A stretch of 64,000 bases of DNA from Macrostomum lignano (taxonomy: Eukaryota): NCBI GenBank assembly GCA_002269645.1, contig NIVC01002626.1, positions 1 to 64,000 on the forward strand. Direction: 5' to 3'. The notes beneath the pieces are model-generated. The model had not been told where the DNA came from. It saw only the letters and a program-made list of their open reading frames with translations, and searched no databases. The translations under genes were made by a program, and so were the position numbers. Of this stretch, positions 401 through 56,195 are shown one piece after another. Within the stretch, counting starts at the first letter, position 1; each line of letters opens with the position of its first letter.

Positions 401-1459
401 CCATGACTTTTACGCTTTTATCCTGATCCTAATCCTTGGGATGACATGCTCGTAAAATTTTTACGAGCATATTGCAAATTGTCACGATATGTCCAGGTAA
501 TCAGCAGGCATCCCTCTTAAAGGGATGAGAGGCTGCTCAAAAGACCTCATCAAGAGCACGATTTGGCCAGTCCCTCTCTCCGGACTCCTAATCATCTTAT
601 ACTTAACGCCAGTTCTCTCAGTCAGTCAAAGTACGAGTAACTCAAGCACTCAGCACGAAAAGCTTCCGTTGTTAAATCCAAAAGACCAAATTCTTCCAGA
701 ACTAATCTCCATTCCAATCAGTAATTTCGTAACTTAATTATCTTTATTTTCCCAATAGGCTGGAACGGGTCTGAAAGTCCCATAATTTGCCCGAGAGGGA
801 CAAGTCCTCCAATATCAGTGTTGGCCAAGAGGGAAAAATTGCCACGCAGCTGAGGGGATTCATAATCCATTATTGGGCGCAATCAGGAAGGTTGGCTGGT
901 TCTAATTTTGTCTCCCAGGAGTCATCCTCGCCAGTCTTGTGTGCGCGCGGGAGGGCGAGCCGCTATTGAAGCTTTTAAAACCTGTTGCTGAGAGAGAGGG
1001 GGGCCTTTACGTGAAAAAAAATACATTGACACTTCAAACTCGTCTTGCCTTTCGCGCTACAGTCCCACTGCTTGTCTGCTGACTGACGCTGAGAAAGATC
1101 ACGGATGATCTGTGGGGGGAGAGGCGCTTTCACGAGATCCAACTTTCGCATCGCCTTAAATTTCAGAAGCGAATTTTTTGTTTAATTAATTAAGTAGCTA
1201 AGATTTTCATAAACTATGCCTAAACTGGCGAAGTTTAGGCGTATGCGAGAGGTTGCTTAACTTTAGTGAATGTTATTAAATTTAGGTCTTGTGAAACTTA
1301 AGTCTTAAGACTCGTTTACACTGCTATTATATGAGGCAAGAGAAATTTTAGTCGCCAATCTTTCTGAGTCATCAATGCTTTCTCATTGCGTAGAGCGAAC
1401 TTATTGTCGCCTAAATTTATCGCTGTAGTGTGCTTGAGCCCCCTCCAGGGAAAAATCCG

Positions 1460-1793
1460 TAGTGAGGAATTCCCTTTTTGCCTCTCCGGTGTCGAAAATG
1501 CAGAGCACTTCATCTGTGAATGCTCCACCTTTACTCAGGACAGGCTCACGTACCTCGGCACAAATTCAGACTTTTCCTGTGTTTTTATGATCGATGAATC
1601 TCTGCTAGCTCGTCCGCCACCTAAGGGCTAATCGGGCGAGCGATCATCCACCTGCATGGACTCTCCGGAGGGACACGTACTGGCACCACGGCGGATCTCC
1701 CTGCCAGGGGTTAGCGGAATGGGCGTCAACGCCTTCCCGCCCGCTGTATCCGGATGCCCGGAACCCCCTGCAGCTGAGTCAAGTCAGACCAAG
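1460..1793 (+). mobile_element. 5'-truncated LINE remnant (C-terminal zinc knuckle plus 3' UTR), related to the element at 16947-22842
   Basis: ORF 1386..1631 contains FCLSGVENAEHFICECSTFTQDRLTYLG, versus FCNSGDETAEHFVSICPAFTRARLTYLG in the full-length LINE. It ends in TAGCGGAATGGGC...CGCC...CCCTGCAGCTGAGTCAAGT like the LINE 3' end. Confidence 0.85.
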
Positions 1794-8300: not shown

Positions 8301-9859
8301 GGTGAACCAACTGGTATCTGCATGGCTGACTAGAGGCTTGACACCTGAGCGTCGTTCTTGTGCCGAACGGCTTCAAATAGATTAACAATTTTACAAATTT
8401 CATGACGAGACGAACAGCTGGCGAGATCAAACACGAATACGTCGGCTTCTAACTGATTATACAAGGTCTGTAAATCATGATGGTTATAAGTTGCATAAAC
8501 TGTTTTGAGGGAGCTTTGCCCCGACCTGTAACGAGAATCCGCCATCTACCTCCCGATAGTATATGCACCGTAGTGGCCGTCTCTGAGGCCACTTTTTTGT
8601 TTCATAATTAATGCATTTCTCTCAACCGAATGTCAGATACATGTAGATGTCTCAGACGGGAAGTGTCGAAGCGTGTGCTCAGTACAAGCCGGACTGTCTG
8701 CCTGTCCCGCCCAGACTAGTGCTTTTATATAGCCTCGATATATTTTGAGCGAAATGCTTCACCGTGTGCATGCGGTATAGTGAACTCTATAATGGAGAAT
8801 GTAGCAGACATATAAATATCGAAAAAAGACTGGAGTTAAGGGTTATGTATAGCTTGAGCCATGTGAACGTCAAATTTTGTTACATCATGAAAAGTACTAA
8901 ACGATGAACAGATGACACCAATTTAAAGTGCTCCGTCCCTCGATGACGTCATAGTCTTTGTTCAGCCTTAAGAAATTCTTTCTTTTGTCAACCTTGGCTA
9001 GACACCGACAGTGGGACACGAGCGACCTAGGTTTTAGATACTAGTCTTTATTGTTGATTGATGCATTCATTTCTGTATTTTGTACCGAGTGGAGCAATGC
9101 TAGCACATAAAAGTTCCTTTAATTTGTCAGAATATTCCAGAGATGCAACGAAACTTTGTTGTCATGGTGATTTTTCATTACAAAATAAAGAGCAGTAAAC
9201 CAAATCAAACACAATATTTTATTTAGTGCATAGTTTTGTAGACTTATATTTTGGCAATAAATCGTATGAGTCTTCAGGGCAAATAGTGCAATTACAGTTA
9301 CGACCTGCTCTAAGCACCAGTGCTCAGAGCAGTTATCATGCAGACTCTTTATGGGCTTTCATTTGCAGGTCTAAAGGGTCCTAAAGGGATGACGCGGCTA
9401 AGGGACCATACCAGCTATACAGCTCGACTGAGCAGGACACTGCCCGGCAGGAAAATAAATTCATTTTTATTGCATCGAAGTGAATTCTATAGCTATTTGT
9501 CAGGCTAGTTCACCCCAGTTGAATACAGCTCCTAAGTGGCATATAAAAGCAGGAGTTATTATATTTATAAAACCCTCTAAAATCTGAATAATTTATGACT
9601 TCAGTGAAGGCGAATGGACCAGCCGTAGAAAATTCGAATTAATTAAAAAGCTACCGTCAGGGGGGATCAAATAGGTTCAGTATATCATCGTACGACGAAA
9701 ATGAGAGACAAAGACAATTCATTCAATTTTCTAATTGACGATAGATTTCTGGATTTAATTAGTTAAAGATGGATTGCCAGCAATTAAAATCAATATTTCG
9801 TTTTGTTTGATTTCTATACATGTAGTCAGCAGTAAGTCTATTCTAGGGGGGGGGGGGCA

Positions 9860-10258
9860 TCAAGGCTCTGACCGTGGCCCTCTCGGGTCATGACTGTTTT
9901 GCCAGGCACCGTCACCTAATCCGCAACGAGGAACCGTCTGTCCTCTCCGGCCTCTCCGGTGTCGAGAATGCTCACTACACAACAGGCTCACTTACCTTGG
10001 CCCAAACCGTACCTCTCCGACGTTTTCAGGTCTGAAAATCTCTGTCAGCTCGTCCGCTACCTATAAGGCCTACAGGGAAAGCGACCATCTACCTCCTGGA
10101 CTCTCCGACCGTGCTGCGAACATCGGCACCACCGGATCTCCCTGCGCGACAGCGAAATACCAGCTGCCCGCGGTCGCCAGCGGGGTTTAGCGGAATGGGC
10201 AGCAACGCCTCCTCGCTGCATCAGGATGCCCCCCTGCAGCTGAGTCAAGTAAATCAAG
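9860..10258 (+). mobile_element. Degenerate 5'-truncated LINE 3' remnant, same subfamily as 1460-1793
   Basis: Starts with ALTVALSGHDCFARHRHL-like coding (cf. TMTLSGHGCFSRHQYL). Shares GCCTCTCCGGTGTCGA..AATGC, AGCTCGTCCGC and GGATCTCCCTGC with 1460-1793 and ends with the same 3' motif. Confidence 0.8.
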
Positions 10259-14165: not shown

Positions 14166-14400
14166 GTTGGCGCGTTGCAAGCCGAAATTCCGGCTAGTTG
14201 CTATTGTGCGGCAAAGTCGTCCGCAGCGCGGTCCCCCTTCGGATAGGTGAGCCTGTCCTAAGTAAAGGCTGGGCATTCACAGATAACGTTCTTTGCATTC
14301 TCAACACCGGAGAGGCAGAATAGGCATTCCTCTCTATGCGGATTTTCTATCGGGGTTCCACCTTAGAGACACCCTTGTTAGAGGCGCCTAAGCGGTTGTG
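14166..14400 (-). mobile_element. Degenerate LINE 3' remnant (zinc-knuckle region), probably interrupted by the adjacent MITE
   Basis: Minus strand TGCCTCTCCGGTGTTGAGAATGCAAAG..TTATCTGTGAATGCCCAGCCTTTACTTAGGACAGGCTCACCTA matches 1480-1550; it is followed by a TAGCCGGAAT variant of the 3' motif. Confidence 0.7.
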
Positions 14401-16811: not shown

Positions 16812-16946
16812 GCATAGCTACAGAGACTGAAGGGTTGGGGGTTCGCACTCGGAAGAATTTTTGTACTTGAGCAAAAGTTCACCCAGCTGCAAAATGTGTG
16901 CCAGCATTAGCTAGGGTACTTGAGGATTTGTGTACGTCGACCCCCC
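16812..16946 (+). mobile_element. 5' half of a CORE-like SINE split by the LINE insertion
   Basis: Contains GGGGGTTCG (B-box-like) and AGTTCACCCAGCTGCAAAATGTGTGCCAGCATTAGCTAGGGTA, then CGTCGACCCCCC, as in the intact SINE at 58418-58600. Confidence 0.8.
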
Positions 16947-17043
16947 TTGACTTACTTGACTTAGCTGCAGGGCTGTCCCGGAGGGGACACAGCGGGAAGG
17001 CGCGGGCGCCCATTCCGCTAGTCCCTGAACGGCCGACGCGTCG

Positions 17044-20000
17044 CTATGGACGGAGGGTTGGCGCCGCCCAGGGAGGTCCCCCAGTGTCGCCAGCAGCTAT
17101 GGTGCTCTCTGGAAAGGAGAGTTCAGCCCTGCGGGTGGCCCGAAGGTAGCGCATGAGCTGATTAAAGTTTTCGGGTTTGCACGCTTCAGTAATAGATGTG
17201 TGTGGCCCGAGGTAAGTGAGTCTGGCCCGCGTGAAGGCGGGACAGATGCTGACGAAATGCTCAGCGGTTTCGTCACCTGAGTTGCAGAAACTACAGGTGG
17301 CGTTGGTGGCGTTGCCCTGCAGGTACTGGTGCCTGGAGAAGCAGCCGTGACCAGAGAGGGTCATGGTGGCAGCCCGGATGTCTCTGCGAGAGGCGCAAGA
17401 GGAGCTTCCGGAGCTGGTGAGAGGGCTGAGGGACAGCGCCTCTGGATTGCCTGCAGTTCGTGCGGTTCGCCCAAGTCGAGCGGTGCTGAGTCCTGATCCA
17501 CGCTTTGATGCGTGAGTCGATGACACAGCCAGGAATCGGGACAAGAGGTTCGGGGCCGAGAGAGGAGCCGGAGGCACCAACTTTTGCAAGGGTGTCAGCC
17601 AACTCATTTCCTCGGATCCCCACATGCCCCGGAACCCACTTAAGGGTAATTTTGTTGGCGGAACCCAACACATTGAGGAGTTTGATACAGTCAAGGACTG
17701 TAGCAGAGTTGGTGCTGCAGCCACTGATGGCGTGCAAGGCAGCTTGGCTGTCCGAATGGAAAATGATGTTCTTACCAGTAACGCCAGTGGCGAGAAGCTC
17801 TGCAGTGCAGGAGCTGATGGCCAGAACTTCATTTTGGAAAACACTGGAGTTGACCCCAGTGTATTGAGCGTGGGTAGCGATGACCCTCCCGTTCAGAAAG
17901 ATTCCAACACCAAAGCCGGTGTTGGCTGACTGCTTAGAACCGTCGGTGTAGCAATGAAGCTCACCAGGGTTCCAATGGTCATTGATGTTATCGCGCGAGT
18001 CGATAGCTACGGAGTAGCGCTGTCTCAGGTTGAGCGTTGAGGCAATGCCATCGGTGAAGACGCGATTGGCCTGACACTCGTTGAGAAAGTTGAGGCACAG
18101 ATCGCTATGCGGGACAAGGTTCCGCTTAGCAGGTGCTCTCATGTAAATGAATTTGACGCCGGCATCAATTAGACGCCGCGTCGTTCTAGCCGCCTCACCC
18201 CTGATGAAGAGGTCAAGAGGCGGAAGATTAAGGAAGGCCCCCATGCCAGCAAAGGGCTGGACCTGGTGGCGTTGCAGATGAGCCTACACGCTCTGCCTTG
18301 GATCGTGTTGAGCAGGTCTGCATGGCTTTTGACCTGGGTAGCGCTAACCCAGACAACAGAGGCGTACGTAATGGCAGGTCTAACTACGGAAGTATAGATC
18401 CACCAAAGCCGCTTTGGGGATAGACCCCAAGAAGTGCCAAGTGCTCGTCGGAGCTGGGCCAGGATGGCTGAGGCACGCTTGGCTTTTGCTTTCACGTGGA
18501 AGGACCAGTTGAGCCGGTGGTCAAGTGTGACCCCGAGACATCTGGTCTGGTGCGCGAAGGCAATATCTCTGCCGTAGAGCTGCAGAGGACGTATGTTCCA
18601 GCGTAGTCTGCTGGTAAACATAATGGCAACGGTTTTGGGCTCAGAGAGTTCCAGACCATTGTCATTGGCCCAGGATTCTGCTTTGCGGATAAAGCTCTGC
18701 ATCAGATCCCTGAGCGTGCTGGGAGACGGTCCTGCCACAATGGCCGTGACGTCATCAGCATACCTGACTTTGAAGACGGGGTCGGGTCGGGAGTCACTCA
18801 AAAGAGCGTCCATGACCAGGTTCCAGAGCGTCGGGGTGAGGACTCCGCCTTGGGGTCCACCCTTACAGACTCTGGTGGAGGCAGTTTGCCCAAGAAGTTG
18901 GGCAGTGACCGTACGGTTGGAGATCATGTACATGATCCACCGTATGAGGGTAGCATGAGCTTTGCGATTTTGAAGGGCCCTCTGAAACGCTTCAAAGATA
19001 ACGTTGTCGAAGGCGCCAACAATGTCAAGAAAGAGAGCCAGAGCGTAACCGTCACCCAGTACCGCCCTTTCAATCTTCTCGACAATCGCATGCAGGGCGC
19101 TGTCAGTCGACCTCCCGGTACGGAAGGCGTGCTGATTATTGCTGAGGGGCATCGCTGTCAGCTCGCAGGACAGCAGCCGCCAGAGAATAAGCCTCTCAGT
19201 GAGCTTAAGCATTGCTGACGTTAAGCTAATAGGCCGGAAGGCCTTGACGCTTTGGTAGTCACCCTTCCCAGGTTTGGGAATAAAGACTACCCGAGCTTCA
19301 GTCCAGCATTTGGGAACGTATCCCAGCTGGATAGAGGCCCGCATAGATTGCGGGTGAGTCTCAGGAACGAGGGTATCTTGGCTGCTTCACGAAGGAGAAC
19401 AGGGTAGATACCATCAGGTCCAGGAGATTTGAAGGGTTTGAAGGTTCTGACCGCACGAGCGATTAGGTCTTCAGTGACAATGCCCGCCGCTAGGGTGGCT
19501 CCATCCATCGAATGGTTGGGCTCCGGTCTAGCAGTAGGTACCCTCGGGAAGAATGTGCTAAGCATATGCTGAAGCACTTCTTCAGGGTCTTTAGTAAGAG
19601 AGCCATCATCTTTTTTGATCATGGCTAATTTGGACATTTTGTCCATTGTAAGGGCCTTGACAAGCCTAGAAGTAGGTCTGTCTTGATCCAATTCATTGCA
19701 GAATTGGCGCCACTTACATTCCTTGGCCTTGCGCACTTCAGATTTGAAATTGCGGGAGGCTTGCCGGAAAAGCTCCATGTCCTCCGGGTTTCCGGTCTTC
19801 ATGGCACGGCGATGAAGGCTTTTGGCCTTCCGCCTGAGTTTCCCCAGCTCCGGGTTCCACCACGGCGCCGAGGTCTTGCCTTTGTAGGCGCGAGCAGGAC
19901 AAGCCGCTTCGTAGGCTTCAATAATGCAACCTGTCAGCGTCTCAGCCATATGATCCACATCCTCGCAGGTCTCAATCGGACGTAAGTCCGTGAGTTCCTG

Positions 20001-20780
20001 CAGGTGCAGATCAAGGGCAGCCTTGTAGGCCGCCCAATCAGTGTTGCGGATATTGCGTCTCCAAGTGATCGGAGACTGGGTTTTAGTGTCCGCGATGTTA
20101 AAGGCGATAAAGCAGTGGTCAGACAGGGAGGGCTCCTCAGACCAGACTCTCCACTCCTCAACTCTGTCAAAGAGTCTTGGGGTAACGAGTGTGGCGTCGA
20201 GGACCTCGGTCCATCTGCCATTATTAAAGGTAGGAGTGCTGCCGCGGTTGCAGAGCATGAGGTTTGTGTTAGAGATGAGGGCCAGAAGCTCCTCTCCTCT
20301 AGTGTTGGTATCTTTGCTGCCCCAGTGCTTGTGGTGCGCGTTGAGGTCACCCCCTAAGCACAGCTCAGCGTTCTGGGACTCGCAGTACTGCGCGAGGCGC
20401 AGTAAACTCTCAGGAGCAGGGTCTCTGTCGCCTGGGATATAAACCGAGGCAACAAGACACGTACGCGGAGAGAAATGATTAGATTGGATGACGCAAAGGT
20501 CTCCATCAGAGAGATCAGTCCTCAGCCAAGCCTGGAGATGGCTAGCAGCGAGGATAGCCGCTCTAGGGCGGCTGTTCCCCGGGCCACACACATAAAAATC
20601 AGAGTAGCCAGAGGGAATGTTGGGCAACTTACCGTTGCGCATCCAGGGTTCCTGGATCAGGATGAGGCCTGGCCTGTACAGCTCAGCAATCTTCATCAGA
20701 TTTACTGACGCAGATACGCAATGCTGTAAATTAATTTGCAGACAGAATGTCGCTCCTTTGGCAGCGTGGAGCTTAGTCAT
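17044..20780 (-). CDS. LINE ORF2: AP endonuclease, reverse transcriptase, RNase H and C-terminal CCHC knuckle; three single-base frameshifts (about 19345, 18250, 17390)
   Basis: APE motifs LQINLQH, LIQEPW, GGDLNAHH, LDATLVT, SDH. RT motifs FRPISLTS, QHAFRTGRST, FLDIVGAFD, GPQGGVLTP, YADD. RNase H motifs YTDGS, SDSQAAL, WVPGHVGIRGNELAD. Knuckle CSFC-x8-H-x4-C. Pieces are ORFs 19287..20780, 18169..19344, 17291..18244 and 17044..17844. Confidence 0.95.
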
Positions 20781-20819: not shown

Positions 20820-22324
20820 TCAAGGAGACTTGGACAACAGATCGTCCTCGTCCCAGGCCGCTGGGGCTTGACTGGGAGATGGGAGTTGGTCGACGTCCAT
20901 GGCCTCCTCTACCCCACCGGCCCCCCCAGCAGAGTCCTCAGGCTCCGATGACAGGATGGAGGAAGCTTCCTCACCTGCATCTTTACCTTCAGACCCCACC
21001 AAGGTGGCCGAGGAGAGCTCGGATTCCGAAGACCCGGCCTCGTCCTCAACTCCTTCTCCGACTGGCAGGTTTGGTTCCCGGGGCTTGGCCGGAGCCGTTA
21101 CCGCGGTCGCCGAACTGCTGCTAGCAGAGGGGCGAGATGCAGCTTTGGCTTTGGGATCGGCTTGCGCCTTTCCTTGGGCCTTAGACTGCGCCCCGCTCTT
21201 GCCGGAGATGCCGGGGTTGGCAGTAGCCTTCCCTTTGGCAGACTTTCCTCGGCGCATCTTGAGCTTGAGGGCACCCAGCTGGAAAGAGGATCCATTAGGG
21301 TACCGACTCGCCCAAGTGCTGGAAAGGCCGAGGACAATTGAGTTGCCCGTCTCCCCCCTGCGGACTCGCGGTGATACACCAGTCCACTAGCAGGGAGGTC
21401 GGGGTTCAGACGCAGTAGGACCCGGCGAATAACGTCTGGTCCAGCTGCGGTGCTCTTAGCAGGGACGAAAACCACATAGGGTATCGTCTTTGGACGCTGG
21501 CCCTCGCGAAGAAAAAGAGCTCCGCCAAGGTCAGCATCCAAGGAGACCGTCGGTAGCCGCTGGAGCAGCCGCCGAGCGTCCTCCTCGCTGCTAGGAGCAA
21601 TAAGAACGAATGTGCTTCGCAGCACCATCCGCTCAATGCCGATGGAGATTCCCTCCTCGACAGTCAGCTCAATCAGATAGGAGTCAACAGCACTCCACAC
21701 TTTTTGAAGCTGATCAGTGGTCCAGTCCTGGTCGCGACCTTGGATGATCACTCCCGGGATTTTGGCCTTGGCCTTCGCCGCAAAGGTAGCTCCCGAAGGA
21801 ACCTCCTTGTTGGCAGTGGCCATTTGTTGCGCCGTGGTTTCGGCCTCAGCAGCCGCGGCAGCAGCTCCAGGGAGCGCCGCCGCTGAACTACTGGAGCTTC
21901 CACCGGCCGGCCCGCCTGGTTGCCTTGGGACTCCAGTCGCTTCAGCATCCATGGTGGACGCCGCCGCTTTGGCCCCCGCAGCTCCCTTCTTGGCCTGCCT
22001 TTTGGCGCGTTGTTTAGCGCGTTTGCGCTCAAGCCGAGCCCGCTGAGCTTCATCGGATCTGCCAGATTTGGCCGGTCCTTTAGGCTCAGAGCTCGCGGTT
22101 CCCTTAGATCCACCAGCGGAGCTGGCAGGTCTTTGGGTATTTTGAGTTTGGTAGCTCTGGTCGGATCTGCCAGCAGAGCCAGCCGGTCCTTCCTTTGCCA
22201 CAGTTGAATCAGTCGGTTGGGATCTGCCAGCAGGGCCGGCCGGTCCTTCGGACTGAGGTTGGGGTTTAGAAGGGTCCCCGTCCCTAGAGTTAGCTTGATT
22301 ATCCATAGACGGCTCGAAGGCCAT
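20820..22324 (-). CDS. LINE ORF1 (nucleic-acid-binding/chaperone), one frameshift in a G6 run (about 21355)
   Basis: First ATG at 22324 (the track start 22381 is GTG). Adding one G at 21353-21358 joins ORF 21098..22381 to 20820..21257 via ETGNSIVLGLSSTWASRY. It ends 39 nt before the ORF2 ATG. Confidence 0.82.
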
Positions 22325-22602
22325 GATAAAAGGTTGGTGGGCTACCCTCAAAGGGGCGCAGTACCCACCCGGCCGCTCCACCTGACCGGGCAGTAGGCCA
22401 ATAGCACCCTCAAGGCTGGCCCGACACCAGGAGGGGGACCGCTTGCGACCGGACTACTCCCCGGCCTTCCAGCCCATCGGCACGGTCAACACCTTAGGCA
22501 TTAGAGAGTACGTTGAGCAGTACCACGGCCTGCAGGTTGGCGAGCCAGACCCGCATACCCAAATTCGGCCGAAGCCACTGGATAGGGTCGCCAGCGCCGG
22601 AG

Positions 22603-22842
22603 CCCAGTCTGTCCAGCAGCCCTAGGGACTGCCTTGAACACACGCGGGGACGAGTACCCTGGGTCGACTTGCGAGACAGCGTGGGGGGGGGTCTGCGGCT
22701 GCCAGAGGCAAATAGAGGGTGCAGACCTCCCACCAGCCTTGACCTGCTGAAGATAGGGGCAGGCGTGAAGCATCGCAGACCTTAGCCCATGGGCCTAGTC
22801 TGTCTCATACTTCACTGACATGCTGAATACGCCTTCGCGTGC
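22603..22842 (-). ncRNA. HDV-like self-cleaving ribozyme at the LINE 5' end
   Basis: P1 GCACGCG (22842-22836)/CGCGUGU (22646-22640) with G1-U wobble; P2 CCCA/UGGG; P3 GGG/CCC; L3 UACUCGU; P1.1 AC/GU; P4 GGCAGUCC-CUA-GGGCUGCU; J4/2 CAGAC with the catalytic C at 22611. The cleavage site coincides with the TSD boundary. Confidence 0.85.
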
Positions 22843-22945
22843 CGTCGACCCCCCAGTCCTTGGACTGAAAGCCCGTACGCAGCCTTCAGGCTGAGCTGTC
22901 GGTTGCACATCTGTCCGTGGGCAGGTGTAATCTATTATTATTAGT
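22843..22945 (+). mobile_element. 3' half of the SINE split by the LINE
   Basis: CGTCGACCCCCCAGTCCTTGGACTGAAAGCCCGTACGCAGCCTTCAG...GCTGAGCTGTCGGTTGCACATCTG...GGGCAGGTGTAATC followed by TTA repeats, matching 58590-58720. Confidence 0.88.
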
Positions 22946-25469
22946 ATTTTAGCCACTGCGTTGTCTTTTGCATCTTCCGATGTCGCTCGTCTGTACACGA
23001 TTCCGAAGCCCAAACGCGATGTCGATAGACGCCGATCATGCAATTGATGTGCGTCGCTGATATATAGTTATGTTTGGATTACGCCGATGGCCGGATAACG
23101 ATCGAAGTCGTAAGTCGGCTTAATGTCGTTACAATAAAAATTAGCTCATTTTCCAGCGACGCTCGTGCATAGACGTCGAAAACGTCGGATTGCTGTATGT
23201 GGGGCAGAAGTACATGTGCATGCAGGCTAGCTTGTTCAAATCGATTGGTTTAATGTTTCCCGATGTGACATGTACATGTTTACATGTCTATGTATTCACG
23301 TTTGATGTGCTGCCCGCAGTTTTTTTAATGTTCCTTAACATAATCAAACATTAGTCTGCGTTGATAAAACTTTTTTAATTCATGCACATGTAAATCAGCT
23401 AATTGACTAAAAAATTGAAATTTTCGTTGTATACTATTATGAACAGTAATGTAGCAAATTAACACATTTGACTGTCACTATTTGAAAGCCGACTATTTTA
23501 CTATTTGATCGACGTACAGTTGAATCAATTGCATGTCGTCAAATGAAACACGACCGATTTATACGACCTATAGCGCTACTAGCTGCTTTGTAGATGTGTA
23601 TAGCGCATAATACATGTAAATGTAATTTTCACAACAGGTGAAAGTTTTTAGGCTAGATCGAAGTCCTTGAGCTGAGGCTAAAACAGAGGACCGCCAACTC
23701 TACACGGACGTAGCTGAGATATTCGTGAGAATTTGCCTTTTCAATGGCTGCGCTACTTTAAAATCATTAATTAAACATAAATTGATATCGGCGTATTAAA
23801 ATTTACTTACTACATGAGCTGTTAGAGTAAAAATTTATTTGTATTCTTAGGTTGAAATGTGCAGAATATGAACTACATGCCTACAAATTATAAGGTATTA
23901 CAACATGGACATGCAGTGCCTGTAGTGTATGCGAACGTACATGTACATGATATATAAGTATAAATTTACATGAATCTATAAAAATTCACATATGAATAAA
24001 GCAGATACTTTTTCATAGCTGTAATAGGGTAATGCTAGGGGATGAAGATGTGAGAATTTGTCATTTAGCTATGGTTACGCTTTGCCTTGAGCGTGCGTGA
24101 CTGAATATTTGAATTAAAAAAATTCTAAATGAAGATCAGCTAGGCTTTAAAAGAACGTGTATGGCGATAGTATTAAGTAAAAATAATCTGAAAATAAAGT
24201 TACAGTAGTTTTGCAGAATATAAAGTTAAAATTATGATACTATTTGTTTAGCTATCAAACGTTTCTTAGAATCGTTAATTTAAGTGGCGCTAATTTGACT
24301 GATTATTTTAATCATCGCGGACTTAATTTGTCGTACATGTCAGCAAACATTTTAATCCTTGACCGCAAAGTTGGAAATTCTCGATAAAAAAGTAATTAAA
24401 ATATTTATCAGTTAATAATATTAATAAAATCATTTCTTTTTTTCCAAACTTTCTAAGAAAAACAGGCATAAAATGTAGTCTTTAGTAGTGTTATGTTGAA
24501 GCTTTAACTTATTAATCTAGGAATATAAAGCCTAAATTTTCATAGTTGTAATAATATTTGACTGAAAGAATTATCATTTATCAGATTTATTTAAGCTTCG
24601 TCATCATGATATAATGCTCCTTACAAAATTTGTTTTAAATTTAAAATAGCTAATATTAATATTTTGTCTTCTAGTATATAATTAAACAAGAAATTACGCC
24701 CTAAACTCAGCGACTGTTTTTCTACCAGCGTATTGATGAACTTAATGTTTTTTATATTTTTGAGTCTGACCTCCTCTGTTTACATATATGTAAATAGCAA
24801 ATGTAAATAAAATCTACATTGTAATAAAACATATACTTTATATATTTTGAGAAAAAATACATCAACTTTTTCTTAATTTCATTTCAGATTTTACTATATG
24901 TGTCAAGATATTAATTATTATAAGATAAAACCCTTAAATTTTTTTATAGTTGGCGTATGTTTCTTTTCCTTTATCTAACTATTGCTAACTACATTGTTAA
25001 CTATTCTAGCATTAAGGTTTTAAGCTAGCTAGTATCTGAAAAAAAATCTTTATAGTCATTTTTTTATTTGAAGAAACTGTTTTTGAATCTACTATGTACT
25101 CCTATTATGAGACAAAATAATATTTGTTTAATTTTAAGCTTTATTAATATCTATTTGTCTAAATAGTGCCATAATCTATTTATAACAAATATTTCTAGCA
25201 TGTGTTGTTAAGTGGCTTCATTTTTATAAACAGTGTCTAATATGTCTCAAATCTTTGTTTAACCATAATCATTGAATATTTTTTTAATGGCAACATTGTC
25301 CAAATGTGGCTTTACCAAGTTTGAGATAGCAAAGAGCTATTTTATGTCGTGAAAAAAATATAGGTCAATTTTCTCTATACCTACGGTATTTATCAGTTGC
25401 GTTTTTGTTCAAATTGAAAGTGCACCACTAGTTTTTTTGTGATGATTTCTTAGAAAAAGGAGAGGATAT

Positions 25470-36519: not shown

Positions 36520-38701
36520 CAGAGGCGTCGCCATGGATTTTATCGTGGGGAGGGAGACAAAGCCAAGAATTCCTACATGTACATGACTAAATTCCTATAT
36601 GTCCGAATTAGTGTTTTCAGCGCTCATGTTAGCGCCGCAGGCATTCATGTTAGCGCCGCAGACACTCATGTTAGCGCCGCAGACACTCATGTTAGCGCCG
36701 CAGGCACTCATGTTAGCGCCGCAGACACTCATGTTAGCGCCGCAGGCAGTCATTTTAGCGCCGCAGGCACTCATGTTAGCGCCGCAGGCACTCATGTTAG
36801 CGCCGCAGGCATTCATTTTAGCGCCGCAGACACTCTTTTTAGCGCCGCAGACACTCATGTTAGCGCCGCAGGCACTCATTTTAGCGCCGCAGGCACTCAT
36901 GTTAGCGCCGCAGGCACTCATGTTAGCGCCGCAGGCATTCATGTTAGCGCCCCAGACACTCATTTTAGCGCCGCAGGCACTCATGTTAGCGCCGCAGGCA
37001 TTCATGTTAGCGCCGCAGGCATTCATGTTAGCGCCGCAGACACTCATGTAAGCGCCGCAGACACTCATGTTAGCGCCGCAGGCATTCATGTTAGCGCCAC
37101 AGACACTCATGTTAGCGCCGCAGACACTCATGTTAGCGCCGCAGGCATTCATTTTAGCGCCGCAGGCACTCATGTTAGCGCCGCAGGCACTCATGTTAGC
37201 GCCGCAGGCATTCATTTTAGCGCCGCAGACACTCATTTTAGCGCCGCAGACACTCATTTTAGCGCCACAGACACTCATGTTAGCGCCGCAGGCACTCATT
37301 TTAGCGCCGCAGACACTCATGTTAGCGCCGCAGGCACTCATTTTAGCGCCGCAGGCACTCATGTTAGCGCCGCAGGCACTCATGTTAGCGCCGCAGGCAT
37401 TCATGTTAGCGCCCCAGACACTCATTTTAGCGCCGCAGGCACTCATGTTAGCGCCGCAGGCATTCATGTTAGCGCCGCAGGCATTCATGTTAGCGCCGCA
37501 GACACTCATGTTAGCGCCGCAGCCATTCATGTTAGCGCCGCAGCCATTCATGTTAGCGCCGCAGACACTCATGTTAGCGCCGCAGACACTCATGTTAGAG
37601 CCGCAGGCATTCATGTTAGCGCCACAGACACTCATGTTAGCGCCGCAGACACTCATGTTAGCGCCGCAGGCACTCATTTTAGCGCCGCAGGCACTCATGT
37701 TAGCGCCGCAGGCACTCATTTTAGCGCCGCAGACACTCATTTTAGCGCCACAGACACTCATTTTAGCGCCGCAGACACTCATTTTAGCGCCACAGACACT
37801 CATGTTAGCGCCGCAGGCACTCATTTTAGCGCCACAGGCACTCATGTTAGCGCCGCAGGCATTCATTTTAGCGCCTCAGACACTTATTTTAGTGCCGCAG
37901 ACACTCATTTTAGCGCCGCAGGCACTCATTTTAGCGCCGCAGGCACTCATGTTAGCGCCGCAGGCATTCATTTTAGCGCCGCAGGCACTCATTTTAGCGC
38001 CGCAGGCAGTCATTTTAGCGCCGCAGGCACTCATTTTAGCGCCGCAGACACTCATTTTAGCGCCGCAGGCACTCATTTAGCGCCGCAGGCACTCATTTTA
38101 GCGCCGCAGGCACTCATGTTAGCGCCGCAGGCATTCATTTTAGCGCCGCAGACACTCATTTTAGCGCCGCAGACACTCATTTTAGCGCCACAGACACTCA
38201 TGTTAGCGCCGCAGGCACTCATTTTAGCGCCACAGGCACTCATGTTAGCGCCGCAGGCATTCATTTTAGCGCCTCAGACACTTATTTTAGTGCCGCAGAC
38301 ACTCATTTTAGCGCCGCAGGCACTCATGTTAGCGCCGCAGGCATTCATTTTAGCGCCGCAGGCACTCATGTTAGCGCCGCAGGCACTCATGTTAGCGCCG
38401 CAGGCACTCATGTTAGCGCCGCAGACACTCATTTTAGCGCCGCAGGCACTCATGTTAGCGCCGCAGGCATTCATTTTAGCGCCGCAGGCACTCATTTTAG
38501 CGCCGCAGGCAGTCATTTTAGCGCCGCAGGCACTCATTTTAGCGCCGCAGGCACTCATGTTAGCGCCGCAGGCACTCATGTTAGCGCCGCAGGCACTCAT
38601 GTTAGCGCCGCAGGCACTCATTTTAGCGCCGCAGGCACTCATGTTAGCGCCGCAGGCACTCATTTTAGCGCCGCAGACACTCATGTTAGCGCCGCAGGCA
38701 C
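36520..38701 (+). mobile_element. Second copy of the hAT-like MITE (left end only) with the 21-bp array expanded to about 2.1 kb
   Basis: Same 5' end as 13648 (CAGAGGCGTCGCCATGGATTT...ACAAAGCCAAGAATTC) and the same 21-mer (about 99 copies, 36622-38701). No right TIR was found. Confidence 0.8.
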
Positions 38702-39299
38702 TAGAACCCAGTGGTCGCGGAGCGAGAGTTTCTGGTTATCTGTTTCTATTTGAAGAATTTTCTACAGCTGCTAAGTCAGCAAGATTAGCTGCGGCAGAGA
38801 GTTGGCCTGAGTCCGATGCCGCTGTAGATGAAGCTGGCTAATCCCCTCCGGAATGGGTCGGGAGATGTGGGAAGATGGGATTTCAGATGGGCTCGCGCAC
38901 ATTCTGTGCCTTCAGTCCTATAGTGCAACCCAAAGTCCAACAGTGGAATTTATCCCGATTCTCGAATTCGTTTAATCTCAGCTGTTTAGTTCCTGTGCTG
39001 GATTTGCATAAGCCTACTGTACTTGTGAAATTTTGTGAGCATATACCGATATGTATAGAAAAAAGAGTTTTACAGCGTGCTGAAGTGTTATAATCTTTTG
39101 CTAAAACTAACGGTAAGAAACTATTTTTTATAATAAATTTGGGAAGACTTGAAAGTGCATATTTTTGAATACTTGAACTTAGGTTTGCTGTGCAATATAC
39201 GCTCGCAGTTGCCTAAAATTTCATGCCAGCACAAACTGAAATAAAAAAGCTGACTAATTGAAATTTTGCACAGCTTTTACAATAGATGTAATTTTTTTC

Positions 39300-40460: not shown

Positions 40461-40662
40461 GTGAGGGCTTTTATTATCATACAGGCCACTTGTCTACCAA
40501 GATTTGATTGGCACACGCATTCGATGTCTAATCTCTCTTTAAGTACTTTTATCCGATAAGTTAAGAAAACCTCCACTTCTCAATGTCAATCTTTCTGTAG
40601 ATGTGTATAAGCTTAATAAAGGTTGCCTGAGGAGACGTTCGGAGAGCCTTGCAGTTGAATAG

Positions 40663-41635
40663 TGAATGGTGAGATGGAGAGTGAAGAGTTAGATGGAGAG
40701 TGAAGGGTGAGTTCGAGGAGTGAAGAGTGAGACAGAGAATGAAGGGTGAGATGGAGAGTGAAGGGTGAGATGGAGAGGAAGGGTGAGATGGAGGGTGAAA
40801 GGTGAGATGAGAGTGACGGGTGAGATAGAGAGTGTAGAGTGAGATGGAGAATAAAGGGTGAGATGGGGAGTGAAGGGTGAGATAGAGAGTGAAGGGTGAG
40901 ATGAATAGTGAAGGTTAAGATGGAGAGTGAAGGGTGAGATGAATAGTGAAGGTTAAGATGGAGAGTTAAGGGTGAGATAGAGAGTGAAGGGTGAGATGAA
41001 TAGTGAAGGGTGAGATCGAGAGTAAAGGATAAGATGGAGAGTGTAGGGTGAGATGAATAGTGAAGGGTGAGATGGAGAGTGTAGGGTGAGATGGAGAGTG
41101 TAGGGTGAGATGGAGAGTGAAGGGTGAGATGGAGAGTGTAGGGTGAGATGAAGAGTGAAGGGTGAGATGGAGAGTGAAGGTTTAGATCCAAGGAATGAAG
41201 GTAAGATGGAGAATGAAGGTGATATGGAGAGTGAAGGGTGAGATGGAGAGTGAAGGGTGAGATGGAGAGTGAAGGGTGAGATGGAGAGTGAAGGGTGAGA
41301 TGGAGAGTGAAGGGTGAGATGAATAGTGAAGGGTGAGATCGAGAGTAAAGGATAAGATGGAGAGTGTGGGGTGAGATGAATAGTGAAGGGTGAGATGGAG
41401 AGTGTAAGAGTGTAGGGTGAGATGAATAGTGAAGGGTGAGATGGAGAGTGTAAGGGTGTAGGGTGAGATGAATAGTGAAGGGTGAGATGGAGAGTGTAGG
41501 GTGAGATGGAGAGTGAAGGGTGAGATGGAGAGTGAAGGGTGAGATGGAGAGTGAAGGGTGAGATGGATAGTGAAGGGTGAGATGAATAGTGAAGGTTAAG
41601 ATGGATGGTAAAGGGTGAGATGGGGAGTGAATGAT
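40663..41635 (-). repeat. 19-bp minisatellite, purine-rich orientation (GAGATGGAGAGTGAAGGGT)
   Basis: Reverse complement of the 42259-45990 array. Confidence 0.96.
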
Positions 41636-42258
41636 GAGAGACTGGAGAACAATAGAAAGCAAGGAAGTACACTGTGACATCGTAGAGCAATGATAGCAGA
41701 GAACAAAATAAAAAAAATTGCACTCGTACAATAATGATTCCGCTGTAAGAATATGCATTCATCACTATAGGCGCTTTTTTACTACAGACGCACCAACCAA
41801 GCAAATAAAAATTTTCAGTTCATTTCTTTCTAACGACAAAGGCCAGCCTAAGAGAGAGAGAGATAGAGAGACTAAGGAACTGGTCGCAATTAGCTTGATC
41901 CCCAGTAAAAGACGGTAAGAATTCAAAAAGAACTGTGAAGGTAAGGAGACAGAGGAAGAAGATAGAAGGCACAAGACATGACTCTTGTCTGTGGGGCAAA
42001 GACTGCTAAGTGAGGGTTTTTAGGGAAATTTTAATTAGCAGTTTCAGCCGCAGTTCCTCTGCCTAAGACCAAGGAACAGAGATAGAGGGATGGAAGGCCG
42101 GGGGAAACCCTGCAAATGGAAGCGATTCATGCTTTTAGGGGGAAGATTTCGGATTCTTTATTACCAATACGGCACATACAGCATGGCCTTCGAAATGTGA
42201 AAATGAAATATCATACTAGTACTGGCAGTCCCACAATTTACGTCTGCTTCCGTGTTTA

Positions 42259-45200
42259 TCTCACCCTTCACTCTCCATCTCACCCTTCACTCTCCATCTC
42301 ACCCTTCATTCTCCATCTCACCCTTCACTCTCCATCTCACCCTTCACTCTCCATCTCACCCTTCACTCTCCATCTCACCCTTCACTCTCCATCTCACCCT
42401 ACACTCTCCATCTCACCCTACACTCTCCATCTCACCCTTCACTATTCATCTCACCCTTCACTATTCATCTCACCCTTCACTATCCATCTCACCCTTCACT
42501 ATCCATCTCACCCTTTACCCTCCATCTTAACCTTCACTATTCATCTCACCCTTCACTCTCCATCTCACCCTTAACTCTCCATCTCACCCTTCACTATCCA
42601 TCTCACCCTTCACTATCCATCTCACCCTACACTCTCCATCTTATCCTTTACTCTCGATCTCACTCTTCACTCTCCATCTCACCCTTCACTCTCCATCTCA
42701 CCCTTCACTCTCCATCTCACCCTTCACTCTCCATCTCACCCTTCACTATCCATCTCACCCTTTACCCTCCATCTTAACCTTCACTATTCATCTCACCCTT
42801 CACTCTCCATCTCACCCTTAACTCTCCATCTCACCCTTCACTATCCATCTCACCCTTCACTATCCATCTCACCCTACACTCTCCATCTTATCCTTTACTC
42901 TCGATCTCACTCTTCACTCTCCATCTCACCCTTCACTCTCCATCTCACCCTTCACTCTCCATCTCACCCTTCACTCTCCATCTCACCCTTCAATCTCCAT
43001 CTCACCCTTCACTCTCCATCTCACTCTTAACTCTCCATCTCACCCTTCACTATTCATCTCACCCTTCACTATCCATCTCACCCTTTACCATCCATCTTAA
43101 CCTTCACTCTTCATCTCACCCTTCACTATCCATCTCACCCTTTACAATCCATCTTAACCTTCACTCTTCATCTCACCCTTCACTATCCATCTCACCCTTT
43201 ACCCTCCATCTTAACCTTCACTCTTCATCTCACCCTTCACTCTCCATCTCACCCTTAACTCTCCATCTCACCCTTCACTCTCCATCTCACCCTTAACTCT
43301 CCATCTCACCCTTCACTCTCCATCTCACCTTTAACTCTCCATCTCACCCTTCACTCTCCATCTCACCCTTTACCATCCATCTTAACCTTCACTCTTCATC
43401 TCACCCTTCACTATCCATCTCACCCTTTACCCTCCATCTTAACCTTCACTATTCATCTCACCCTTCACTCTCCATCTCACCCTTAACTCTCCATCTCACC
43501 CTTCACTCTCCATCTCACCCTTAACTCTCCATCTCACCCTTCACTCTCCATCTCACCTTTAACTCTCCATCTCACCCTTCACTCTCCATCTCACCCTTAA
43601 CTCTCCATCTCACCCTTCACTCTCCATCTCACCCTTTACTCTTCATCTCACCTTTTAACCCTTCATCTTAAACCTTCACTCTTCATCTCACCCTTCACTA
43701 TCCATCTCACCCTTTACCCTCCATCTTAACCTTCACTCTCCATCTCACCCTTCACTATCCATCTCACCCTTCACTATCCATCTCACCCTTTACCCTCCAT
43801 CTTAACCTTCACTCTTCATCTCACCCTTCACTATCCATCTCACCCTTTACCCTCCATCTTAACCTTCACTCTCCATCTCACCCTTCACTATCCATCTCAC
43901 CCTTTACCCTCCATCTTAACCTTCACTCTTCATCTCACCCTTCACTATCCATCTCACCCTTTACCCTCCATCTTAACCTTCACTCTCCATCTCACCCTTC
44001 ACTATCCATCTCACCCTTTACCCTCCATCTTAACCTTCACTCTTCATCTCACCCTTCACTATCCATCTCACCCTTTACCCTCCATCTTAACCTTCACTCT
44101 TCATCTCACCCTTCACTATCCATCTCACCCTTTACCCTCCATCTTAACCTTCACTCTTCATCTCACCCTTCACTCTCCATCTCACCCTTCACTCTCAATC
44201 TCACCATTCACTCCCAATCTCACCCTTTACTCTCCATCTCACCCTACACTCTCGATCTCACCCTTTACCATCTATCTCACCTTCATTCCTTGGATCTAAA
44301 CCTTCACTCTCCATCTCACCCTTCACTCTCCATCTCACCTTCATTCTCCATCTCACCTTCATTCCTTGGATCTAAACCTTCACTCTTCATCTCACCCTTC
44401 ACTCTCCATCTCGCCCTTCACTCTCCATCTCACCTTCACTCTCCATCTCACCCTTCACTCTCCATCTCACCCTTCACTCTCCATCTCACCCTTTACCCTC
44501 CATCTTAACCTTCACTCTTCATCTCACCCTTCACTCTCCATCTCACCCTTCACTCTCAATCTCACCATTCACTCCCAATCTCACCCTTTGCTCTCCATCT
44601 CACCCTACACTCTCGATCTCACCCTTTACCATCTATCTCACCTTCATTCCTTGAATCTAAACCTTCACTCTCCATCTCACCCTTCACTCTCCATCTCACC
44701 TTCATTCTCCATCTCACCTTCATTCCTTGGATCTAAACCTTCACTCTCCATCTCACCCTTCACTCTACATCTCGCCCTTCACTCTTCATCTCACCCTTCA
44801 CTATCCATCTCACCCTTTACCCTCCATCTTAACCTTCACTCTTCATCTCACCCTTCACTATCCATCTCACCCTTTACCCTCCATCTTAACCTTCACTCTT
44901 CATCTCACCCTTCACTATCCATCTCACCCTTTACCCTCCATCTTAACCTTCACTCTTCATCTCACCCTTCACTATCCATCTCACCCTTTACCCTCCATCT
45001 TAACCTTCACTCTTCATCTCACCCTTCACTCTTCATCTCACCCTTCACTCTCAATCTCACCATTCACTCCCAATCTCACCCTTTACTCTCCATCTCACCC
45101 TACACTCTCGATCTCACCCTTTACCATCTATCTCACCTTCATTCCTTGGATCTAAACCTTCACTCTCCATCTCACCCTTCACTCTCCATCTCACCTTCAT

Positions 45201-55039: not shown

Positions 55040-56195
<1,156 letters not shown>

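What the first reader, a model, noticed from the sequence alone, without database searches (positions are those of the whole stretch)
22603..22842. HDV-like self-cleaving ribozyme defines the exact 5' end of a full-length RNase H-bearing LINE
Seen in sequence (minus strand): all elements of the nested double pseudoknot occur in the correct order. P1 is GCACGCG/CGCGUGU with the canonical G1-U wobble, P3 is GGG/CCC, and L3 is UACUCGU (U20...G25 retained). P1.1 shows a compensatory A-U pair in place of the usual C-G (L3 AC pairs with GU after P1). There is a P4 hairpin and J4/2 C-A-G-A-C (fits C-N-R-A). Independently, the 12-bp TSD places the element's first nucleotide at 22842, which is exactly G1. 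Established knowledge: HDV-like ribozymes process R2, RTE, L1Tc/ingi and some LOA-clade 5' ends. Inference: this is a functional ribozyme on an I-group/LOA-like element in a probable flatworm genome, where I do not know of one being described. Weak point: P2 has only 4 contiguous bp (6 with a bulge).
Basis: partly seen in the sequence, partly recalled or inferred. Interest (0 to 1): 0.9.

Follow-up and report, generated by a model that had tools for sequence, protein, structure and literature searches.

The report
HDV-like ribozyme at flatworm LINE start
The first ~240-256 bases of a dead 5.9-kb LINE retrotransposon, probably in the flatworm Macrostomum lignano, can fold into an HDV-type self-cleaving ribozyme whose cut site falls exactly on the element's first base; this is a credible but untested new example of a known way retrotransposons trim their own RNA.

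Summary
On the minus strand, every claimed element (P1, P3, L3, P1.1, P4, J4/2 and a short P2) is present at the stated coordinates. An exact 12-bp target-site duplication independently places the LINE's first base at G22842, which is G1 of P1.

A Lupták-lab HDV-like descriptor matches after three relaxations, each with precedent in R2 ribozymes, plus a loosely scored P4:
- J1/2 is about 170 nt.
- L3 position 2 is A, compensated in P1.1.
- P2 has one mispair.

With these relaxations the only hits in 128 kb share one core: G1 (7-bp P1) and a 6-bp alternative P1 at 22823. Shuffles give about 0.1 hits per 128 kb. With P1 anchored at the true 5' end, 0 of 60,000 shuffles match.

Rfam models do not hit. 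Nested folding prefers a competing hairpin. No other copy could be retrieved, so covariation and 5'-end stacking remain untested.

The copy is full-length but dead: three frameshifts in ORF2 and at least one in ORF1.

Most likely this is a 5'-processing HDV-like ribozyme of an APE/RT/RNase H LINE, a new member of a known kind. Cleavage is unproven. Confidence is about 0.7 and interest is moderate.

The parts
22843..22854 (-). 5' copy of the target-site duplication, GGGGGGTCGACG. It would be the leader released by cleavage.
   Evidence: Exact 12-mer repeat; 0.12 matches (at up to 1 mismatch) expected by chance.
22836..22842 (-). P1 5' strand, GCACGCG. G22842 is G1 and the first base of the element. 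The predicted cleavage is 5' of it.
22669..22835 (-). J1/2 insert of 167 nt. It is a self-contained branched domain closed by GCG/CGC and CAGC/GCUG helices, starting 3 nt after P1 and ending 2 nt before GUCG (P1.2-like).
   Evidence: MFE -66.3 kcal/mol, z = -2.0, 6 of 200 shuffles as stable. The same closure appears in constrained folds.
22660..22668 (-). P2 5' strand: CCCA (22663-22660), the bulged or mispaired A22664, and a possible extension GUCG (22668-22665).
22647..22659 (-). P3 (GGG/CCC) enclosing L3 UACUCGU. The U20 and G25 equivalents are U22656 and G22651. A22655 and C22654 form P1.1.
   Evidence: Compared with the descriptor TYYHCG*Y.
22638..22646 (-). P1 3' strand CGCGUGU (22646-22640) followed by GU (22639-22638), the 3' strand of P1.1.
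22612..22637 (-). P4 hairpin: 2 bp, a 2x1 internal loop, 8 bp and a CUA loop.
   Evidence: Base-pair probability is 0.97-1.0 for the upper 7 bp; pair list.
22607..22611 (-). J4/2 CAGAC. It fits CNRA* of the published descriptor. C22611 is the predicted catalytic cytosine.
22587..22606 (-). P2 3' strand UGGG (22606-22603), a 12-nt insert, and a possible extension CGAC (22590-22587) that pairs with GUCG 22668-22665.
   Evidence: GUCG/CGAC base-pair probability is 0.94-0.97. Its role as a P2 extension is my inference.
20820..22324 (-). ORF1, with its first ATG at 22324. It has no Pfam hit and at least one frameshift near 21100-21257.
17044..20780 (-). ORF2 with APE, RT, RNase H and a C-terminal Cys/His motif. 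It is split into four frame segments by three frameshifts near 19345, 18253 and 17385.
   Evidence: Pfam hits; tblastn frames against intact relatives.
16947..17043 (-). 3' UTR ending in the duplicated unit TAAGTCAAG. There is no poly(A) tail.
16935..16946 (-). 3' copy of the target-site duplication.

Best explanation
The first ~240-256 nt of this LINE RNA encode an HDV-like (nested double-pseudoknot) self-cleaving ribozyme with a large structured J1/2 insertion.

Proposed mechanism:
- When the element is transcribed as part of a longer read-through transcript, P1, P1.1, P2, P3 and P4 fold.
- C22611 acts as the general acid/base, and the RNA cleaves itself immediately 5' of G22842.
- Cleavage releases a LINE RNA with a 5'-OH that starts at exactly the first base of the element. 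Full-length reverse transcription of that RNA explains why the insertion begins at G1 next to the TSD.

Shown here: the sequence elements, their order, and the coincidence with the TSD-defined end.

Inferred: folding into the pseudoknot, catalysis, and the co-transcriptional role. This particular copy is a dead insertion, so its ribozyme is best seen as a near-intact fossil of the family's active one.
For: 1. All helices and conserved positions are present.
2. The sequence fits the published RNArobo/Lupták descriptor (GNNNNN*:NNNNNY; P3 3 bp Watson-Crick; TYYHCG*Y; RN; P4; CNRA*) apart from three relaxations and a P4 internal loop. Each relaxation has precedent in experimentally supported R2 ribozymes (PMC3774820): J1/2 of 216-498 nt, an A at L3 residue 2 in one silkmoth, and P2 mismatches in about a third of elements.
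3. The non-consensus A22655 in L3 is matched by U22638, which keeps P1.1 at 2 bp.
4. G1 is the first base after an exact 12-bp TSD.
5. The descriptor's only hits in the real window share this one core: G1 22842, plus a 6-bp alternative P1 at 22823. Shuffles give 0.08-0.13 hits per 128 kb, and 0 of 60,000 when anchored at the 5' end.
6. The catalytic C directly follows P4, and P4 is predicted with probability 0.97-1.0.
7. The J1/2 insert folds on itself (z = -2.0) and brings the ends of P1 and P2 together. This matches the activating peripheral domain described for large HDV-like ribozymes (PMC4908430).
8. L1Tc, which like this element encodes APE, RT and RNase H and has a 12-bp TSD, carries an HDV-like ribozyme at nt 1; Baggins also cleaves at the element's 5' end (PMC6765202 and PMC3774820).
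Against: - No Rfam family matches, even at E<=10 on a 101-nt or a 601-nt slice.
- P2 has only 4 contiguous bp.
- In nested folding, P1, P2 and P3 have pair probabilities below 0.01. The nested part of the HDV-like fold scores -92 kcal/mol against an MFE of -107.5 kcal/mol, because a long imperfect hairpin (22668-22587) competes with it.
- Only one copy is available, so there is no covariation and no evidence of 5'-end stacking.
- 17 loci holding distant relatives (29-50% identical in EN or RT) gave no convincing HDV-like motif.
- This copy carries at least 4 frameshifts, so ribozyme bases may also have mutated.
- The relaxations to the descriptor were chosen after seeing the candidate. A very lenient version matches 6% of anchored shuffles.
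Confidence: 0.7

Rival explanations
1. Chance resemblance. A GC-rich 5' UTR happens to contain the few conserved bases and short helices of the HDV-like motif. The element's 5' end is set by something else, such as an internal promoter's start site.
For: - HDV-like ribozymes have only about five conserved nucleotides (PMC4870747), so loose descriptors match easily. The lenient version hits 6% of anchored shuffles and many slid anchors.
- There is no Rfam hit.
- P2 is weak, and nested folding disfavours the helices.
Against: - At the stringency the candidate actually meets, 0 of 60,000 anchored shuffles match, and the background rate is about 1e-6 per position.
- That stringency is a perfect 7-bp P1 closed by G·U, a Watson-Crick P3, L3 U.CUCGU, a 2-bp P1.1, and P4 abutting a CNRA.
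- The non-consensus L3 base is compensated in P1.1.
Confidence: 0.12
2. A structured 5' UTR with another role, such as an internal promoter, a protein-binding site or a translation element. The real fold would be the nested one predicted by MFE: the branched 22832-22671 domain plus a long imperfect hairpin 22668-22587 tipped by the 'P4' stem. There would be no self-cleavage.
For: - The nested MFE (-107.5 kcal/mol) beats the nested part of the HDV-like fold (-92 kcal/mol).
- The MFE gives GUCG/CGAC and the P4 stem probabilities of 0.94-1.0.
- The J1/2 domain is modestly more stable than shuffles.
Against: - Nested folding cannot score pseudoknots or tertiary contacts. Adding P2 (-5.2) and GUCG/CGAC (-2.9), plus P1.1, which was not computed, narrows the gap to roughly 5-7 kcal/mol.
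- This reading does not explain why the 7-nt complement of the element's very first bases sits immediately 3' of a P3/L3 unit with the conserved bases.
- The two roles are not exclusive. The first 77 nt of L1Tc are both a promoter and a ribozyme (PMC3383444).
Confidence: 0.1
3. The family's master copy has, or had, an active HDV-like ribozyme, but this copy's version is inactivated by mutation, for example at the P2 mispair A22664xC22602.
For: - The copy is old enough to have three ORF2 frameshifts and at least one in ORF1.
- P2 is the weakest helix, and a single substitution at 22664 would give 6 bp (inference).
Against: - No family consensus is available to show that any ribozyme base differs.
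- P2 mismatches are tolerated in about a third of R2 ribozymes.
- An alternative P2 extension, GUCG/CGAC, exists.
Confidence: 0.3

Closest known systems
R2 retrotransposon HDV-like ribozymes (Drosophila, silkmoths and others; predicted in the planarian Schmidtea mediterranea). Eickbush & Eickbush 2010; PMC3774820.
   Same: - A 5'-terminal nested double pseudoknot that processes a co-transcript.
- A very long J1/2 loop (216-498 nt in silkmoths, about 170 nt here).
- A conserved P3/L3/P1.1 core.
- P2 tolerant of mismatches.
- An A at L3 residue 2 is seen in one silkmoth R2.
   Different: - R2 is site-specific for 28S rDNA, has a restriction-like endonuclease and a single ORF, and often cleaves upstream in the 28S sequence.
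- This element has an APE endonuclease, RNase H and two ORFs. It inserts at a non-rDNA site with a 12-bp TSD, and the predicted cut is exactly at element base 1.
L1Tc/ingi-clade L1TcRz (Trypanosoma cruzi). PMC3185411, PMC4035085.
   Same: - A non-site-specific LINE that encodes APE, RT and RNase H.
- A 12-bp TSD.
- An HDV-like ribozyme that starts at nucleotide 1 and frees the element from longer transcripts.
   Different: - L1TcRz is compact (77 nt) and doubles as the Pr77 promoter. The ribozyme here spans about 240-256 nt with a large peripheral domain.
- L1Tc has a poly(A) tail. This element ends in TAAGTCAAG repeats.
- The host is a kinetoplastid, not a metazoan.
Baggins (LOA clade, Drosophila) and RTE-clade HDV-like ribozymes (Ruminski et al. 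2011, J Biol Chem). The paper is not held in the library and is cited here from reference lists and from my own knowledge.
   Same: APE-type LINEs whose 5' end is defined by an HDV-like ribozyme. Cleavage at the element's 5' end is stated for Baggins in PMC3774820.
   Different: - The hosts are arthropods and other phyla.
- Clade membership of the present element was not tested.
- Some relatives of this element have a DUF4780 ORF1. No Pfam domain was detected in this element's ORF1.
Twister-variant ribozymes at the 5' end of Perere-3 LINEs in Schistosoma mansoni (PMC8501958).
   Same: A flatworm APE-type LINE that uses a 5' self-cleaving ribozyme for RNA processing, with the TSD lying next to the ribozyme.
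   Different: - It is a different ribozyme class (twister versus HDV-like).
- In Perere-3 the P1 substrate strand lies in the TSD. Here P1 lies entirely inside the element.
drz-Agam-2 type large HDV-like ribozymes with a P1.2 peripheral domain (PMC4908430).
   Same: A helix within J1/2 that brings the distal ends of P1 and P2 together. Here it is GCG/CGC plus CAGC/GCUG, closing a 162-nt domain 3 nt after P1.
   Different: The domain here is much larger and branched, and its activating role is only inferred.

Membership tests
HDV-like self-cleaving ribozyme (nested double pseudoknot) | P1 of 6-7 bp that starts at the cleavage site, with G1 paired to a pyrimidine (descriptor GNNNNN*:NNNNNY). | tested here: met
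   GCACGCG/CGCGUGU gives 7 canonical pairs closed by G22842·U22640.
HDV-like self-cleaving ribozyme (nested double pseudoknot) | A 3-bp Watson-Crick P3 enclosing a 7-8 nt L3 of the form U-Y-Y-H-C-G-(N)-Y. | tested here: inconclusive
   P3 is GGG/CCC. L3 is UACUCGU, which matches 6 of 7 positions; position 2 is A rather than Y. The same deviation is reported in one silkmoth R2 ribozyme.
HDV-like self-cleaving ribozyme (nested double pseudoknot) | P1.1: L3 positions 2-3 pair with the two bases that follow the P1 3' strand. | tested here: met
   A22655-U22638 and C22654-G22639. The A/U pair compensates for the non-consensus L3 base.
HDV-like self-cleaving ribozyme (nested double pseudoknot) | P2 of at least 5-6 bp between the bases just 5' of P3 and those after J4/2. 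| tested here: inconclusive
   There are 4 contiguous bp, then the mispair A22664xC22602, then G·U, so 5 of 6 positions pair. A possible 4-bp extension GUCG/CGAC lies across a 12-nt insert. The strict descriptor requires 6 bp. R2 ribozymes tolerate mismatches here.
HDV-like self-cleaving ribozyme (nested double pseudoknot) | A P4 hairpin followed directly by J4/2 of the form C-N-R-A(-N), containing the catalytic C. | tested here: met
   P4 spans 22637-22612. CAGA+C spans 22611-22607, with C22611 abutting P4.
HDV-like self-cleaving ribozyme (nested double pseudoknot) | A short J1/2 (50 nt or less in published search descriptors). | tested here: not met
   J1/2 is about 170 nt. This is a search convenience rather than a family requirement: active R2 ribozymes have 216-498 nt.
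HDV-like self-cleaving ribozyme (nested double pseudoknot) | A match to a curated Rfam HDV-like covariance model. | tested here: not met
   No hit at gathering score over the whole window, and none at E<=10 on 22400-23000 or 22575-22675. The models cannot encode the pseudoknot or a 170-nt insert.
HDV-like self-cleaving ribozyme (nested double pseudoknot) | Covariation that supports the helices across homologous copies. | not testable with these tools
   - There is no second full-length copy in the window.
- The ORF1 search found no homologues, and the closest relatives with DNA are at most 60% identical in RT on short contigs.
- A metagenome scan for the 20-mer core found 0 matches.
HDV-like self-cleaving ribozyme (nested double pseudoknot) | Site-specific, Mg2+-dependent self-scission that is abolished by mutating the catalytic C. 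| not testable with these tools
   This requires an in vitro transcription and cleavage assay.
Retrotransposon 5'-processing ribozyme | The cleavage site coincides with the element's first nucleotide, as defined independently. | tested here: met
   An exact 12-bp TSD ends at 22843 and G1 is 22842. The 3' boundary is corroborated by two sibling 3' ends.
I-group / LOA-like LINE | APE endonuclease, RT and RNase H in ORF2, plus a separate ORF1. | tested here: met
   Pfam Exo_endo_phos_2 at 3.6e-21, RVT_1 at 1.9e-29 and RNase_H at 9.2e-12. ORF1 lies upstream with no Pfam hit.
I-group / LOA-like LINE | Phylogenetic placement of the RT within a named clade (LOA, I, R1, Tad, Ingi and so on). | not tested
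   No reference clade sequences were available. The database hits are unnamed, or are automated names such as 'jockey-like'.

The most novel reading that the evidence does not exclude
This would be the first HDV-like ribozyme on a non-R2, randomly inserting APE/RT/RNase H LINE in Platyhelminthes (Macrostomorpha). It would have an unusually large structured J1/2 domain, an A-U/C-G P1.1 and an interrupted P2. Flatworm retroelements would then have recruited at least three ribozyme classes for RNA processing: hammerhead in schistosome SINE-like repeats, twister variants in Perere-3, and HDV-like in R2 and in this family.
Probability: 0.6. Interest if true: 0.45.

Novelty: new member of a known kind. 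Interest (0 to 1): 0.35.

Why it matters
If active, it extends 5'-processing HDV-like ribozymes to a new LINE lineage and to a regenerative model flatworm whose genome is mostly repeats.

It would also explain how a LINE family without an obvious promoter of its own can yield full-length copies with a precise 5' end from read-through transcription.

Its natural variants (an A-U pair in P1.1, an interrupted P2, and a 167-nt branched J1/2 domain) would be useful test cases for the tolerance of the HDV fold and for the peripheral-domain 'pinch' model.

It does not change the known picture of how such ribozymes work.

Tried and rejected
- **Rfam.** cmscan at gathering score on the whole window, and at E<=10 on two slices, gave no HDV-like family.
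- **Other copies in the window.** BLASTN and TBLASTN found only three 5'-truncated 3' fragments of related families: 1443-1787, 9859-10257 and 14243-14326.
- **Other copies elsewhere.**
  - The exact RT ORF is not on record in the assembly index.
  - EN and RT protein searches found only UniRef M. lignano fragments without DNA, plus relatives at 60% identity or less.
  - The ORF1 domain search found nothing.
  - The metagenome scan for the 20-mer ribozyme core found nothing.
- **Relatives' 5' regions.** I fetched 17 loci (127 kb) and scanned them with the relaxed published descriptor.
  - The only hit was an AT-rich, wobble-heavy match in the ant locus L003. It sits next to an assembly gap and about 1.7 kb upstream of the likely ORF1. 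At about 0.26 hits expected for that much sequence, I judged it chance.
  - L001 is an intact relative with a poly(A) tail and an A8TC TSD. It starts CCGGTAACC and shows no HDV-like core.
- **Descriptor stringency.** An early loose descriptor and a deliberately lenient anchored one were too permissive to be informative.
- **Thermodynamics.** Nested MFE and partition-function folding do not recover P1/P2/P3. I treat this as weak negative evidence only, because pseudoknots are outside that model.

Full report
**What is at the coordinates**

I read 22500-22960 on the minus strand and re-derived every pair by script.

| Element | Coordinates and sequence |
|---|---|
| P1 | GCACGCG (22842-22836) with CGCGUGU (22646-22640); 7 canonical pairs, closed by G22842·U22640 |
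| P3 | GGG (22659-22657) with CCC (22649-22647) |
| L3 | UACUCGU (22656-22650) |
| P1.1 | A22655-U22638 and C22654-G22639 |
| P4 | 22637-22612 |
| J4/2 | CAGAC (22611-22607) |
| P2 | CCCA (22663-22660) with UGGG (22606-22603) |

- P4 begins immediately after the two P1.1 bases (U22637-A22612, C22636-G22613, a 2x1 internal loop, then 8 bp and a CUA loop). The candidate catalytic C22611 therefore directly abuts P4, as the family topology requires.
- Beyond the mispair A22664xC22602, P2 can continue either with G22665·U22601 or with GUCG (22668-22665) pairing to CGAC (22590-22587) across a 12-nt insert. That second helix has a pair probability of 0.94-0.97 in the partition function.

**The element**

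The 12-mer GGGGGGTCGACG occurs exactly twice in the window, at 22854-22843 and 16946-16935 on the minus strand, against 0.12 matches (at up to 1 mismatch) expected by chance. It brackets a 5,896-bp element running from 22842 to 16947.

The base after the upstream copy is G22842. The base after the downstream copy is T. The 5' junction is therefore unambiguous.

The 3' end (...TAAGTCAAGTAAGTCAAG) matches the ends of two 5'-truncated sibling fragments elsewhere in the window.

Coding content:
- ORF1: first ATG at 22324, no Pfam domain.
- ORF2: Exo_endo_phos_2 (3.6e-21), RVT_1 (1.9e-29) and RNase_H (9.2e-12), plus a C-terminal Cys/His motif.

Compared with intact relatives, ORF2 is split into four frame segments by three frameshifts, near 19345, 18253 and 17385. 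ORF1 also has at least one frameshift. The copy is full-length at its ends but dead.

The host is most likely the flatworm Macrostomum lignano. Two UniRef proteins of that species are 100% identical to parts of the EN ORF (19% and 6% of the query), and two more are 78-87% identical to parts of the EN and RT ORFs.

**Comparison with a descriptor written before this candidate was seen**

The supplement of the RNArobo paper (PMC4870747) gives the Lupták-lab HDV-like descriptors:
- P1: GNNNNN*:NNNNNY
- J1/2: N[50]
- P2: 6-7 bp
- P3: 3 bp Watson-Crick
- L3: TYYHCG*Y
- then RN, a P4 helix, and CNRA*

The candidate satisfies P1, P3, RN, P4 and CNRA*; the trailing C22607 is the optional base. It deviates in three places, and its P4 has an internal loop.

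| Deviation | Candidate | Precedent in R2 ribozymes (PMC3774820) |
|---|---|---|
| J1/2 length | about 170 nt | 216-498 nt in silkmoths |
| L3 position 2 | A, compensated by U22638 in P1.1 | A in Callosamia hercules |

**Is it more than chance?**

- A strict home-made descriptor finds one hit on the two strands of the window, at G1 = 22842. Dinucleotide shuffles give 0.08 hits per 128 kb.
- The published descriptor with the three relaxations finds hits only on this one core: G1 22842 with a 7-bp P1, plus a 6-bp alternative P1 on the same core at 22823. Shuffles give 0.13 sites per 128 kb, or about 1e-6 per position.
- With the first 7 bases fixed and the rest of the 5' UTR shuffled, 0 of 60,000 sequences match with P1 at base 1.
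- The relaxations were chosen after seeing the candidate. A deliberately very lenient version matches 6% of anchored shuffles. It allows P1 with a mismatch, G·U pairs in P3, only U...G in L3, no P1.1 or P4 requirement, and P2 of 4 bp or more.

The argument therefore rests on the quality of the match.

**Folding**

Nested MFE folding of 22842-22580 does not recover P1, P2 or P3 (pair probabilities below 0.01). It prefers a long imperfect hairpin, 22668-22587, tipped by the P4 stem.

Forcing P1, P3 and P4 gives -92.0 kcal/mol against an MFE of -107.5 kcal/mol. P2 (-5.2) and GUCG/CGAC (-2.9), plus P1.1 (not computed), would narrow the gap to roughly 5-7 kcal/mol, before any tertiary contacts. This is weak negative evidence, since pseudoknots lie outside the model.

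The J1/2 insert folds as a self-contained branched domain (-66.3 kcal/mol, z = -2.0). Its closing helices start 3 nt after P1 and end 2 nt before GUCG. That is the arrangement the 'pinch' model of large HDV-like ribozymes describes (PMC4908430). The functional link is my inference.

**Comparative evidence: attempted, not obtained**

- No second full-length copy lies in the window.
- The protein databases hold M. lignano fragments without DNA. The nearest relatives with DNA are 50-60% identical in RT and sit on contigs too short to reach a 5' UTR.
- The ORF1 search found nothing. A metagenome scan for the ribozyme core found nothing.
- 17 loci with more distant relatives (127 kb) gave one weak, AT-rich hit, which is the number expected by chance.
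- One intact relative with a clear TSD shows no HDV-like core.
- Rfam finds nothing.

The helices are therefore supported by one sequence only.

**Mechanism and rivals**

The best-supported reading is a 5'-processing ribozyme. Read-through transcripts fold into the double pseudoknot. C22611 catalyses scission 5' of G22842. The released RNA, reverse-transcribed to its end, yields insertions that begin at G1.

This is how R2, L1Tc, Baggins and RTE ribozymes are described (PMC3774820, PMC3185411, PMC6765202).

Rivals:
- Chance resemblance: about 0.12.
- A structured UTR with another function and the nested fold: about 0.10.
- As a sub-case, a real family ribozyme that is mutated in this dead copy: about 0.3.

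**Novelty**

HDV-like ribozymes at LINE 5' ends are well known. A predicted R2 example exists in the planarian Schmidtea mediterranea (PMC3774820). In Schistosoma mansoni the 5' ribozyme of Perere-3 LINEs is a twister variant, and before that work none of the 17 known S. mansoni LINEs had been linked to a ribozyme (PMC8501958).

Full-text searches found no report of a ribozyme in Macrostomum, nor of an HDV-like ribozyme on a non-R2 flatworm LINE.

I rate this as a new member of a known kind, credible at about 0.7, of moderate interest, and easy to test.

Noticed in passing
window 22844-22851 versus 22661-22668 (minus strand): The upstream flank/TSD contains GGGUCGAC, a perfect 8-nt complement of GUCGACCC, the proposed P2 5' strand plus its extension. 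By my own rough estimate the chance of this is about 0.02. At this locus the leader could pair with P2 and compete with ribozyme folding. Since the flank differs at each insertion, it is probably coincidence.
   Followed up: partly
window 1443-1787 (+), 9859-10257 (+), 14243-14326 (-): Three 5'-truncated 3' fragments of related LINE families. Two of them share a conserved 3' UTR block (TAGCGGAATGGGC...CCCTGCAGCTRAGTCAAGT) with the full-length element. This block may be the 3' recognition element for the reverse transcriptase.
   Followed up: partly
window 27087-59977: The right half of the window is packed with more than 20 different micro- and minisatellite arrays with strong strand skew. Examples: a 19-mer ATCTCACCCTTCACTCTCC x196 at 42258-45979, with its reverse complement at 40661-41639; a 33-mer x60 at 50261-52237; a 21-mer x99 at 36623-38702; and (CAGA)x290 at 55040-56195.
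   Followed up: no
proteins P0017, P0041, P0085 (UniRef, Macrostomum lignano): Public M. lignano gene models named as annexin-domain/RT, SUMO-conjugating enzyme UBC9 and WSC-domain proteins contain stretches 87-100% identical to this LINE's ORF2. These are probably chimeric gene predictions that absorbed LINE sequence.
   Followed up: no
L004, L005, L012, L013: Several distant relatives of this element (ENA and Logan contigs) have an ORF1 that matches Pfam DUF4780 (PF16012). The window's ORF1 has no Pfam hit at E<=0.01. It aligns only marginally (E = 0.013, 19% identity) with the ORF1 of L001, which has no Pfam hit on record either. DUF4780 may be the ORF1 RNA-binding domain of this LINE group.
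   Followed up: partly
L001 2895-8406: An apparently intact relative (ORF1 plus ORF2 with APE, RT and RNase H) in an ENA metagenome contig. It has a poly(A) tail and an AAAAAAAATC TSD, unlike the TAAGTCAAG-repeat tail of the window's element, and it has no recognisable HDV-like core in its 268-nt 5' UTR.
   Followed up: partly
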